Assembly (NCBI GenBank): GCA_904063045.1
Contig: CAJFCJ010000012.1
Coordinates: forward strand, 62,001 to 126,000
Direction of reading: 5' to 3'
Source: Dimorphilus gyrociliatus
Taxonomy: Eukaryota; Animalia; Annelida
Length of the DNA: 64,000 bases
This document shows positions 62,023 to 63,969 of this stretch, piece after piece; the first letter of the stretch is position 1, and every line of letters begins with the position of its first letter. A program made the position numbers and the translations under genes. The notes under the pieces are model-generated. The model worked only from the letters and a program-made list of their open reading frames with translations. It had not been told where the DNA came from and ran no database searches.

Positions 62023-62717
62023 TTAATGCATAAGCTTGTTTAAAGTCTTTTTTATCCTTAAGCTGCTTAATCTCGCATCGTACTCGTGAGCCCAGCATTC
62101 AATGGATATCTTTTGAAGCTTTTTACCTAGAAGCTAAATTTTTTAACTTTATAGCAAGTGATATATTTATATATACTGTATATATATATAAGTATATGTA
62201 TACAATAAAACTGGAATAAACAAAAAATAAATGGTTTCTTACCATTTCTGTCTCCTCGCAATCGCTAAATACTGGTCTGCATCTATTCTGGCATACAATT
62301 TGACGAATTTTGCCAATGCTCGTGTCGTGAGATATATTTTCGTAATAAGCAAGATTATACGTTTTAGAACTGTTTTTGACAAGTTCCCATCTGTGATAAA
62401 TTTCCCAAAGAAACAATCCGAATGCGTAAACGTCACTCTTCTTGTAACAGTCAAAATTTGACGATTCTAGTGTACCGTCTAGAATTTCAGGTGAAAGATA
62501 TCGTTTTGTTCCAGCCTATATAAGAAATATTACAATAGTATAGTATATGATCTAATAGGAAATTGCAATATATATTTTTTTTTAGAAATTTAATAGTTTC
62601 ATTCTTTTGAACTGATAAGATAAGCATCTTATGATTGAAAGTAAAATTAGGTCATTATCATTTTGATTTACTTTTTAACGTATAATAAAATATCTAAATA
62701 TATATATATATATACAG

Positions 62718-62749
<32 letters not shown>

Positions 62750-63969
62750 TATAGTTGGGAACTTACAATCAATTTAGGTAAATTTCCCAAATTAATCATC
62801 TTTGTATCGCTATAATAAAGTACTGACACCCCAAAATCAGCTATACAGCAACGTAAATCATCTTTTATTAATACATTATTACTTTTGAAATCGCGATGAG
62901 CTAAAGCAGGTTTTCTTTCTTTTCCGAAAATTTCAGTGTGTAAGTAAGCCAAGCCAGCAGCAGCTGACTGTATTATTCGAAGTAAATCTGTAGTTGATAT
63001 TTTTCTTTCTTGTAAATAATCAAAAACAGAACCATTCGAGTGATACTGAGTTATCAACCAAAACTGTGTTAGGCTATGTCTTGATGTAATATCTGAAGCT
63101 AAATAAGCAAGTATCGTTTCGTGACGTGGAAGAACCTATTATAAGTGTTTATTGCTGTAAAATGTAAACAAGTAATTTTTTCTTATATTAGGGATACCGT
63201 ATTATATATCTGACATTCTCTATTCCACGATTTTTCATTTAGGGAATAAAATATCTTAATAGCCACGTCATCTCCGTGTAAAGAACCTTTCCATACTTCT
63301 CCAAATTTTCCCCTACCGATTGTGTGTGATAATCGTATCTCATTAGCGACGGTTCTATGCATAAGGTATGGCAGACCCATTCCGCTACCGCTAGTTAGGT
63401 TTATATCACATTGTTCCTTTTGTAAAAATAAATATGAATAATAATATACTGTACACACATATATACATACATAAGAAGAACAGTATATTAACATTTAGGT
63501 TAAATGAAATGAAAGACAATAAACTCTAGTAATATTGTGAATATAATGAGGGAGGTTCAGTTATGCGTTTTTTCTTTTAAATTACACAGAAAATCCAAAA
63601 GTATGATAATGAAAGAAATTACGTGCTACAGTTATTTTCGTAATAATCTAAAGTACTCGCCTCTTCATTTATATTGGTAGAACTACATCTGAATTTATAA
63701 ATAACATAGTACGAAAAGATAGCAAGGGCGATCAATAAACCAACTATAATAGGAATTACAAAAGCCAGAACACTTGTATCAACTTTTTTAAGAGTTGAAG
63801 TGGTCTCCGCATAGCTGTATCCAAAATTCTTATTGCAGAAATTCGAATTGCAGCAGGTTATTTTAAAATAATCGGTTGGGGGGACTGTACATTGAATTTG
63901 ATTAAAACCAGCCAAACAACCTTGTTTTTCAATCGAACTTTTCGGTTCTTTAAGAATCGATGAGTAGCA
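62023..63969 (-). CDS. ACVR1: TGF-beta/BMP type I receptor Ser/Thr kinase of the ALK1/ALK2(ACVR1)/Saxophone group; 5' end lies beyond the window
   Basis: Exons 63969-63661, 63416-63198, 63135-62767, 62515-62243, 62133-62023. Ectodomain Cys box CCNSNFCN, then a TM segment, GS box TSGSGMGLP, GRGKFGEVW, VAIKIF, HRDFKS, DFG, GTKRYLSPE, ECW..ARLSSLRIKKTL. The L45 loop ASDITSRHSLTQFW matches the ALK2 type (ASDMTSRHSSTQLW), not ALK3/6 or ALK4/5/7. The symbol denotes the orthology group only. Confidence 0.88.
62699..62746. repeat. (TA)n microsatellite interrupted by CAG, in a receptor kinase intron
   Basis: Direct reading; TACAGTA at 62713-62719. Confidence 0.9.

What the first reader, a model, noticed from the sequence alone, without database searches (positions are those of the whole stretch)
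62510..63400. ALK2-type receptor naturally carries substitutions at FOP activating positions
Human ACVR1 reads LPFLVQRTVA-R206-Q207-ITL, and this gene reads LPYLMHRTVA-N-E-IRL (codons at 63344-63339). Established: R206H and Q207E cause fibrodysplasia ossificans progressiva, Q207D is the standard constitutively active mutant, and R375P is also a FOP allele that disrupts an inhibitory salt bridge. The R375-equivalent position here is Ile (KLIAGTKRY versus NPRVGTKRY, across a predicted splice). The third GS-box Ser is Met (TSGSGMG). Inference: a wild-type receptor with loosened autoinhibition, FKBP12 independence or altered ligand response, or with compensating changes that could be informative for FOP. 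Fast general divergence is the alternative.
Basis: partly seen in the sequence, partly recalled or inferred. Interest (0 to 1): 0.7.

Follow-up and report, generated by a model that had tools for sequence, protein, structure and literature searches.

The report
Fast-evolving worm ALK2 receptor, FOP-like residues
A tiny marine worm's BMP receptor of the ALK2 type really does carry, as its normal state, several residues that cause the bone disease FOP when they arise in the human receptor, but they are part of a general burst of change in this one gene and similar states recur in other fast-evolving animals, so it is a modestly interesting natural experiment rather than a new kind of receptor.

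Summary
The sequence observation holds. On the minus strand an intact ALK1/2/Saxophone-type TGF-beta type I receptor gene reads RTVA-N-E-IRL (AAT GAG, 63344-63339) where human ACVR1 has R206-Q207. The R375 claim is wrong: Lys (62775-62773) aligns with R375, as in all lophotrochozoan orthologues, and is followed by a 2-residue insertion found in no other of 319 receptors.

The gene is Dimorphilus gyrociliatus DgyrCDS8631. The public model is 5'-truncated; it starts at the Met that replaces the third GS serine.

An unnamed close relative (three Logan runs) has the same introns, N-E, the insertion and DFG. Pooled dN/dS is 0.09 (GS exon 0.04), so this is no degenerate copy.

The gene's branch is about 13 times longer than those of other lophotrochozoan ALK2s. 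It differs at 32% of columns that are at least 90% conserved (Owenia 1%). FOP positions are changed at the same rate (3-4 of 11), so they are not enriched. Non-basic 206, acidic 207 and non-Gly 328 each arose 10 or more times among 85 diverse type I receptors.

Loosened autoinhibition is plausible but untested. The scan had already noted this stretch (s1-081361).

The parts
63661..63969 (-). Exon encoding the C-terminal part of the ligand-binding ectodomain (CCNSNFCN knot), the transmembrane helix and a very short juxtamembrane segment. It ends ...NINEE. Upstream exons lie beyond window end 64000.
   Evidence: Translation. Pfam Activin_recp 18.7 bits, partial domain. 69% aa identity and dN/dS 0.24 against the relative. 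Aligned to Owenia and mouse ectodomains.
63417..63660 (-). GC-AG intron in phase 0 (GAAGAG|GCGAGT ... AAAAG|GAACAA). It probably explains why the public gene model misses the upstream exons.
   Evidence: This is the only frame-consistent junction. The donor GCGAGT and the phase are conserved in the relative, and similarity between the two species stops right after it.
63198..63416 (-). GS-domain plus kinase N-lobe exon (EQCD...IYNT): GS box, LP(Y) FKBP12 motif, alpha-GS2 helix, Gly loop, VAIK lysine, alpha-C glutamate.
   Evidence: Pfam TGF_beta_GS 29.8 bits, above the 21.3 cut-off. Best PDB sequence match is ACVR1. dN/dS 0.043 against the relative.
63378..63380 (-). ATG (Met) at the third GS-box serine (human S194). 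It is Phe in the relative. The public annotation uses it as the start codon.
   Evidence: Ser in 63 of 81 and 230 of 238 surveyed receptors.
63339..63344 (-). AAT GAG = Asn-Glu at human ACVR1 R206-Q207.
   Evidence: The relative has AAT GAA, a synonymous difference.
62767..63135 (-). Kinase exon (VLPRHET...PKLI): R258 equivalent, D269 equivalent, ALK1/2-type L45 loop SDITSRHSLTQ (63096-63064), E6 loop, HRD (62898-62890), DFG (62838-62830) and the first part of the activation loop.
   Evidence: phmmer: ACVR1 145 bits, ALK1 142, BMPR1B 121, TGFBR1 111. Coordinates.
62914..62916 (-). AGA = Arg at human G328 (E6 loop). It is Asn in the relative.
   Evidence: Gly in 236 of 238 ALK1/2-biased sequences and 59 of 81 diverse sequences.
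62767..62775 (-). AAA TTG ATT = Lys (aligned to R375) followed by Leu-Ile. Together with the Ala that opens the next exon, this makes a 2-residue longer spacer before GTKRY.
   Evidence: Conserved in the relative.
62243..62515 (-). Kinase C-lobe exon (AGTKRY...ETEM).
   Evidence: The junctions are identical in P0321.
62023..62133 (-). Last coding exon (LLGKK...KLMH) plus the TAA stop.

Best explanation
Shown:
- This is the GS-domain and kinase part of an ALK1/2/Saxophone-type BMP type I receptor gene of the annelid Dimorphilus gyrociliatus. No canonical second copy turned up in the one profile search. The public model DgyrCDS8631 is truncated at its 5' end.
- The gene is intact, has every catalytic motif and folds as an ALK2-like kinase.
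- It has been held under strong purifying selection since before the split from a related species.
- It went through a lineage-specific burst of change that rewrote about a third of the residues that are otherwise nearly invariant. N206, E207, a side chain at G328, a bulky hydrophobic residue at S194, DFG for DLG, a shortened juxtamembrane/alpha-GS1 segment and a unique 2-residue insertion after K375 all date from that burst.
- FOP positions were changed at the same rate as other conserved positions.

Inferred mechanism:
- In human ALK2, R206 ties the alpha-GS2 helix to D269/M270. Q207 bonds W227 and faces an acidic FKBP12 residue. G328 leaves room for the buried GS loop (PMC3481300).
- The worm receptor should therefore hold its inactive, FKBP12-bound state less tightly and switch on at a lower threshold.
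- It keeps R202, D269, R258, W227, S244, the LP motif, three of the four GS phospho-acceptors and a basic residue at 375. I therefore expect it still to need a type II receptor, not to be constitutive.
- This resembles fly Sax-K262H, which turns non-signalling complexes into signalling ones (PMC12415261). It occurs in a family of worms with a reduced TGF-beta ligand set (PMC7854359).
For: Identity:
- P0321, 'DgyrCDS8631 [Dimorphilus gyrociliatus]', matches window exons 2-5 at 100% with my junctions. L004 contains the window sequence.

Family:
- The GS motif is above the Pfam cut-off.
- ACVR1 is the best PDB match for the GS and L45 exons.
- The gene lies inside the ALK1/2/Sax clade (99*) and with lophotrochozoan ALK2 (96*).
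- AU tests disfavour BMPR1-type and TGFBR1-type placement (p 0.046 and 0.049).

Intact and selected:
- Orthologous contigs from three runs share the introns and the N-E, PKLI|AGTKRY and DFG features.
- Pooled dN/dS is 0.09 and the GS exon 0.043, with dS saturated.
- AF2 pLDDT is 92.7 and pTM 0.91. TM-score is 0.91 to ACVR1 structures.

Burst:
- The end branch is 2.08 against a median of 0.16.
- 49 of 151 columns that are at least 90% conserved are changed, against 2 of 153 in Owenia and 7 of 155 in Capitella.
- FOP sites are changed at 3-4 of 11.

Contacts and effects of the human alleles: PMC3481300, 10.1101/170837, PMC7478894.
Sax K262H: PMC12415261.
Reduced ligand set in Dinophilidae: PMC7854359.
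Against: - No functional, expression or FKBP12 data exist.
- Lack of enrichment at FOP sites means the changes need not reflect selection on autoinhibition.
- With about 50 other changes at conserved sites, compensation is entirely possible. One candidate is Arg at position 209, one helical turn after 206, and His at 201.
- The 328 residue differs between the two species (Arg against Asn), and so does 194 (Met against Phe). This looks like relaxed identity rather than a tuned state.
- The AU support for ALK2 orthology is only borderline, and the row is a very long branch.
- The 5' end, start codon and signal peptide are unresolved.
Confidence: 0.45

Rival explanations
1. Fully compensated divergence. 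The receptor is regulated like any ALK2/Sax, with normal ligand, type II and FKBP12 dependence. The N-E, R328 and insertion changes are neutral in the context of about 50 other substitutions at conserved sites.
For: - FOP sites are changed no more often than other conserved sites.
- All partner residues are retained: R202, D269, R258, W227, S244, D336, D354 and the LP motif.
- Each state recurs 10-12 times among 85 diverse receptors, so it is tolerated in nature.
- Residues 194 and 328 vary between the two sister species.
Against: - In human ALK2 each single change (Q207E, G328R, substitutions of R206) activates (PMC3481300; PMC7478894). G328 is described there as a site where no side chain fits.
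- Several such changes, a remodelled activation loop and a remodelled alpha-GS1 coincide here.
Confidence: 0.35
2. An adaptively fixed, truly constitutive or ligand- and type II-independent receptor. This would be a natural equivalent of caALK2, as reported genetically for nematode DAF-1 and SMA-6.
For: - N-E is conserved under strong constraint (GS-exon dN/dS 0.043).
- The closest constellation found is in a nematode receptor (Ostertagia P0113: N-D, Arg328, DFG, Gln375).
- C. elegans type I receptors can act without the type II receptor (PMC8819019).
- The same N-E arose independently in unionid paralogues.
Against: - The ectodomain is conserved (dN/dS 0.24) and three GS phospho-acceptors are kept, which argues for continued ligand and type II input.
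- Human Q207E is a weak allele compared with Q207D (PMC3481300).
- The test for coupling between positions 206 and 207 was not significant.
- dS is saturated, so positive selection on the stem cannot be measured.
Confidence: 0.1
3. The real product is the annotated 311-residue cytosolic kinase that starts at Met194, with no ectodomain, membrane helix or GS loop.
For: The public model P0321 starts at that Met. The upstream intron has a non-canonical GC donor.
Against: - The relative has Phe, not Met, at that codon.
- In-frame coding conservation continues upstream of it (EQ[C/Y]DI[N/D]LTSGSG), and into an ectodomain/TM exon with dN/dS 0.24.
- The GC donor and its phase are conserved.
Confidence: 0.05
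4. A degenerating or unexpressed paralogue, or a pseudokinase.
For: The branch is very long and many invariant residues are changed.
Against: - There are no stops or frameshifts. K235, E248, HRD, N341, DFG and the APE-type motifs are present.
- dN/dS is 0.09 over a saturated dS.
- The fold prediction is confident.
- No second Dimorphilus ALK2-like protein appeared among the 120 best hits of a profile search in which Capitella and Owenia ALK2 were listed.
Confidence: 0.03

Closest known systems
Human ACVR1/ALK2 and its FOP/DIPG alleles (R206H, Q207E, G328E/R/W, R375P; engineered Q207D)
   Same: - Same subfamily: L45 loop SD-x-TSRHS-x-TQ, 48% identity and TM-score 0.91 to ACVR1 kinase structures.
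- The worm wild type has Glu at 207 and Arg at 328, exactly as in the alleles Q207E and G328R, and lacks the Arg at 206.
   Different: - Residue 206 is Asn, not His.
- The R375 position keeps a basic residue (Lys), followed by a 2-residue insertion, rather than Pro.
- The changes sit among about 50 other substitutions at conserved sites.
- They are a fixed, selected wild-type state, not a heterozygous mutation.
Drosophila Saxophone, and insect, nemertean and annelid ALK2 orthologues with Lys at 206 (Sax K262; K262H model of FOP)
   Same: Protostome members of the same clade. Sax forms non-signalling complexes that the FOP-like K262H change converts to signalling ones (PMC12415261). I propose this as the functional analogy.
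   Different: Sax and the canonical lophotrochozoan orthologues (Owenia, Capitella, Lingula, Tubulanus, molluscs) keep K/R-Q, Gly328 and NNK-VGTKRY. The Dimorphilus gene does not.
Nematode type I receptors (Ostertagia ostertagi KAK6019414.1; C. elegans DAF-1 and SMA-6)
   Same: The Ostertagia protein has N-D at 206/207, Arg at 328, DFG and no basic residue at 375. This is the nearest natural constellation. DAF-1 and SMA-6 are reported to act partly without the type II receptor (PMC8819019).
   Different: It belongs to a different branch of the family and does not group with the ALK1/2/Sax clade in the tree, where it is a very long branch of uncertain placement. I did not examine the C. elegans sequences themselves. 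No one has tied the genetic independence to these residues.
Unionid mussel ALK2 paralogues (Potamilus streckersoni KAK3595991.1; Sinanodonta woodiana)
   Same: They read RTVANEITL, the identical Asn-Glu pair, on another long branch inside the ALK2 clade.
   Different: They are a lineage-specific extra copy beside a canonical ALK2 in the same animal. They keep Gly328 and K-VGTKRY and have a degenerate GS box (SSGTSSG).

Membership tests
TGF-beta family type I receptor (ALK) | Activin_recp-type cysteine-knot ectodomain (CC-x4-5-CN) | tested here: met
   The CCNSNFCN motif is present. Pfam PF01064 scores 18.7 bits on the partial domain inside the window, below the 20.9 cut-off because the first half lies outside the window. 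It aligns with Owenia and mouse ectodomains. The upstream exon ...FCEGLT was found in L004.
TGF-beta family type I receptor (ALK) | Single transmembrane helix between the ectodomain and the GS domain | tested here: met
   The hydrophobic stretch VLAFVIPIIVGLLIALAIFSYYVIY is read directly from the sequence. No TM predictor was run.
TGF-beta family type I receptor (ALK) | GS motif (SGSGSG) followed by LP and the alpha-GS2 helix | tested here: met
   PF08515 scores 29.8 bits against a cut-off of 21.3. The variant is SGSGMG. The LP motif is kept.
TGF-beta family type I receptor (ALK) | Catalytically competent Ser/Thr kinase domain | tested here: met
   GxGxxG, VAIK, the alpha-C Glu, HRD...N, DFG, SPE and the subdomain XI Arg are present. 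AF2 pLDDT 92.7. Enzyme activity is not testable here.
ALK1/2/Saxophone subfamily | L45 loop of the Smad1/5 ALK1/2 type | tested here: met
   SDITSRHSLTQ in the worm against SDMTSRHSSTQ in ACVR1. BMPR1-type and TGFBR1-type loops differ.
ALK1/2/Saxophone subfamily | Phylogenetic placement inside the clade | tested here: met
   99* clade and 96* with lophotrochozoan ALK2. AU p 0.046 and 0.049 against the two other subfamilies, which is borderline on a very long branch.
Activated (FOP-like) ALK2 state | Loss of R206 and acidic residue at 207 | tested here: met
   Asn-Glu.
Activated (FOP-like) ALK2 state | Side chain at G328 | tested here: met
   Arg in Dimorphilus and Asn in the relative.
Activated (FOP-like) ALK2 state | Loss of the R375-D354/D336 lock | tested here: inconclusive
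   A basic Lys is kept at the aligned position, and D336 and D354 are kept. A unique 2-residue insertion follows. The geometry cannot be judged with the tools available.
Activated (FOP-like) ALK2 state | Reduced FKBP12 binding; ligand-independent or activin-type signalling | not testable with these tools
   This needs cell assays.

The most novel reading that the evidence does not exclude
Dinophilid worms have fixed, for a long evolutionary time, a natural 'FOP-like' ALK2/Sax receptor. The GS-to-N-lobe clamp, the GS-loop pocket and the activation-loop lock are all remodelled. As a result the receptor signals from complexes that are silent in other animals, perhaps as an adjustment to their reduced TGF-beta ligand set. 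The roughly 50 accompanying substitutions would then include the changes that make such a receptor compatible with normal development.
Probability: 0.2. Interest if true: 0.65.

Novelty: new member of a known kind. Interest (0 to 1): 0.35.

Why it matters
If the worm receptor really runs with weakened autoinhibition, it would be a natural, long-tested solution to living with FOP-type residues. It could also point to second-site changes that tame them.

As it stands, three results are useful:
- The public gene model is incomplete.
- One BMP receptor has evolved about 13 times faster than its orthologues, in a genome otherwise described as conservative.
- Positions treated as invariant in the FOP literature are repeatedly replaced in fast-evolving invertebrate receptors, including the identical Asn-Glu pair in freshwater mussels.

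Tried and rejected
- **Reads.** Expression, the GC-AG junction and the codons could not be confirmed in reads.
- **Exon 2 word search.** It found nothing. The length window of that tool excludes full-length kin, so the blank is uninformative.
- **Joined spliced model.** None was submitted to any tool. Exons were searched one by one by reference. The profile search used an alignment in which each exon was a separate row. Full-length work used the public protein P0321.
- **Paralogue hunt.** The supplements of the genome paper hold no receptor names. Scan notes by words gave no other type I receptor and no FKBP. I cannot list the other Dimorphilus type I receptors.
- **Species of the relative.** The run numbers are not in the paper library or in the Patchwork paper.
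- **Coupling between residues.** The test between 'non-basic 206', 'acidic 207' and 'non-Gly 328' on independent pairs was underpowered and not significant.
- **Structure prediction.** AF2 confirms an intact fold, but coordinates are not returned. It cannot tell active-like from inactive-like geometry or possible compensation by Arg209.
- **Start codon and signal peptide.** They could not be resolved from sequence.
Rejected in favour of Lys plus an insertion.
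Full report
**What is in the sequence**

The finding lies in a multi-exon gene on the minus strand of an AT-rich (70% A+T) animal genome. My model inside the window has these parts:
- An exon for the end of the ectodomain, the membrane helix and a very short juxtamembrane stretch (63969-63661).
- A GC-AG intron.
- The GS/N-lobe exon (63416-63198).
- A kinase exon carrying the L45 loop, the E6 loop, HRD, DFG and the start of the activation loop (63135-62767).
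- A C-lobe exon (62515-62243).
- A last exon ending in TAA (62133-62023).

The GS box reads TSGSGMG, with ATG at 63380-63378. phmmer against all PDB chain sequences aligns the GS exon without gaps to human ACVR1. This puts Asn and Glu opposite R206 and Q207. The best-scoring entry is the Q207E mutant 6eix.

**Whose gene it is**

A profile search returned P0321, 'DgyrCDS8631 [Dimorphilus gyrociliatus]', 311 residues. It is identical to my exons 2-5 with the same three junctions. The genomic locus fetched for it (CAJFCJ010000012.1) contains the window sequence.

The public model begins at the very Met that replaces the third GS serine. It therefore lacks the ectodomain, the membrane helix and the GS loop. 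I take it to be truncated for three reasons:
- In a related species that codon is Phe.
- Coding conservation runs on upstream of it.
- The only frame-consistent link to the upstream exon is a GC donor (GAAGAG|GCGAGT) conserved in both species.

One further upstream exon (...FCEGLT) was found outside the window. The start codon and signal peptide remain unresolved.

**Family**

- Pfam finds the GS motif above its cut-off, plus kinase and partial Activin_recp matches.
- The L45 loop SDITSRHSLTQ is of the ALK1/2 type. On that exon ACVR1 and ALK1 outscore BMPR1B and TGFBR1 (145 and 142 bits against 121 and 111).
- In trees the gene falls inside the ALK1/2/Sax clade (SH-aLRT 99) and with lophotrochozoan ALK2 (96).
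- AU tests give p 0.046 and 0.049 against joining the other two subfamilies. That is only borderline, and the row is a long branch.
- All catalytic motifs are present.
- AlphaFold2 gives pLDDT 92.7 and pTM 0.91. The model superposes on ACVR1 structures at TM-score 0.91 with 48% identity.

**The R375 claim**

Three aligners put G-N-L-P-K opposite human G-N-N-P-R. Lys is the normal residue at this position in Owenia, Capitella, Lingula, nemerteans and molluscs, which read NNK-VGTKRY. So the basic residue is kept.

What is unusual is that two extra residues follow it before GTKRY. This was seen in 1 of 319 surveyed receptors and is conserved in the relative.

- Arg at G328 (62916-62914), a lead I took from the scan's other note on this stretch and then verified.
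- DFG in place of DLG.
- The loss of most of the juxtamembrane/alpha-GS1 segment.

**Is it a live gene?**

The representative search gave an 80%-identical fragment, P0004. Its Logan contigs come from three runs (L001-L003) and carry the orthologue of an unnamed close relative, with introns at the same places.

That species reads TSGSGFGLPYLMHRTVANEIRL, FGNENKPALAHRD, DFG and PKLI|AGTKRY. Counted exon by exon, pooled dN/dS is 0.09 and the GS exon 0.043, with synonymous sites saturated. The Glu codon differs synonymously between the two species (GAG against GAA).

The gene is therefore functional, and the odd residues are old and maintained. Residues 194 (Met or Phe) and 328 (Arg or Asn) vary between the two species, but neither has reverted to Ser or Gly.

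**Is the pattern special?**

I compared the gene with 27 canonical ALK1/2/Sax receptors, from hemichordates and vertebrates to annelids and molluscs.
- The Dimorphilus protein differs at 24 of 94 invariant columns and at 49 of 151 columns that are at least 90% conserved.
- For comparison, Owenia differs at 2 such columns, Capitella at 7, Octopus at 4 and a tunicate at 13.
- Its end branch is 2.08 substitutions per site against a median of 0.16.
- Of eleven FOP positions, four are changed (F198Y, R206N, Q207E, G328R). Three of those are non-conservative. This is the background rate, so the FOP sites were not singled out.

Each state is also recurrent across 81 diverse cluster representatives:
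- Position 206 is not R/K in 15.
- Position 207 is D/E in 15.
- Position 328 is not Gly in 22.
- On a tree of 85 rows there are at least 12, 10 and 12 independent changes respectively.

Named examples:
- Potamilus and Sinanodonta paralogues, with the identical N-E.
- Ostertagia: N-D, Arg328, DFG, Gln375.
- Priapulus: R-D.
- Macrostomum: K-E.
- Hydractinia: G-E together with SGSGMG.

Canonical ALK2 orthologues of annelids, molluscs, brachiopods, nemerteans and insects keep R/K-Q and Gly328.

**How it probably works**

From the ALK2-FKBP12 structure paper (PMC3481300):
- R202 and R206 bond D269, and R206 also bonds the M270 backbone.
- Q207 bonds W227 and faces FKBP12 Glu-55. Glu at 207 would repel it.
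- G328 sits where no side chain fits next to the buried GS loop.
- R375 locks D336 and D354.

Simulations describe the R375-D354 pair as a general lock (10.1101/170837).

The worm keeps every partner residue, R202, the LP motif and three phospho-acceptors. It has lost R206, carries Glu207 and a large residue at 328, and has a longer spacer after K375. My inference is a receptor that leaves the inactive, FKBP12-bound state more easily but still needs type II phosphorylation.

The analogy is Sax K262H, which converts non-signalling into signalling complexes (PMC12415261). R206H and G328R ACVR1 escape normal partner requirements in zebrafish (PMC7478894). Dinophilids have a reduced TGF-beta ligand repertoire with a conserved receptor set (PMC7854359), which could have relaxed or redirected constraint.

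Full compensation is nearly as likely. Nothing here measures activity.

**Limits**

Expression and splice junctions rest on conservation and on the public model.
- No joined spliced model was given to any tool.
- I could not search the whole genome for a canonical second ALK2. The only indication against one is that no other Dimorphilus protein appeared among the best 120 hits of the profile search that listed Capitella and Owenia ALK2.

**Verdict**

The gene is a live but exceptionally fast-evolved ALK2/Sax orthologue. The FOP-like residues are best explained by that general burst, and comparable natural states are not rare. The same stretch had been noted before by this scan (s1-081361).

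Noticed in passing
window 63417-63660 and 63378-63380; protein P0321: The public model DgyrCDS8631 (311 aa) starts at the Met that replaces the third GS serine. It omits the ectodomain/TM exon, which is joined by a conserved GC-AG intron. The annotation is 5'-truncated.
   Followed up: yes
L004:5100-5230 (just beyond window end) against L001:225-350: A block of about 130 nt at the 5' end of the receptor gene is almost identical in DNA between the two species, although synonymous sites elsewhere are saturated. It contains a 12-codon ORF (MLLI(I)VSSQVFF-stop) out of frame with the conserved ectodomain frame. No in-frame ATG is visible for the receptor. It could be a uORF, a UTR element or an unresolved first-exon structure; this is unexplained.
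   Followed up: partly
P0079 (Potamilus streckersoni KAK3595991.1) and P0172 (Sinanodonta woodiana): Freshwater mussels have an extra, fast-evolving ALK2 paralogue beside a canonical copy. It reads RTVANEITL, the same Asn-Glu pair, and has a degenerate GS box (SSGTSSG). This is an independent origin.
   Followed up: partly
P0113 (Ostertagia ostertagi KAK6019414.1): A nematode type I receptor combines N-D at 206/207, Arg at 328, DFG and Gln at 375. This is the nearest natural match to the Dimorphilus constellation.
   Followed up: no
P0059/P0151 (Hydractinia symbiolongicarpus XP_057303824.1 and XP_057303312.1): A cnidarian TGFBR1-like receptor also has SGSGMG together with Gly-Glu at 206/207. 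This is a second lineage in which Met at the third GS serine accompanies a non-basic/acidic pair.
   Followed up: no
window 63661-63969 against Owenia and mouse: The cytoplasmic stretch between the membrane helix and the GS box is much shorter than in canonical ALK2 (about 20 residues against roughly 45-50), and the conserved GDSTLxDL (alpha-GS1) motif is missing. The ectodomain residue aligned to ALK2 Tyr74, the activin A contact in PMC12415261, is Phe in both species, and the next two residues are deleted.
   Followed up: partly
P0001, P0002: The two top-scoring 'proteins' of the representative search are long tandem repeats of a short kinase fragment (14-15 copies). They are probably assembly or gene-call artefacts, not receptors.
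   Followed up: no
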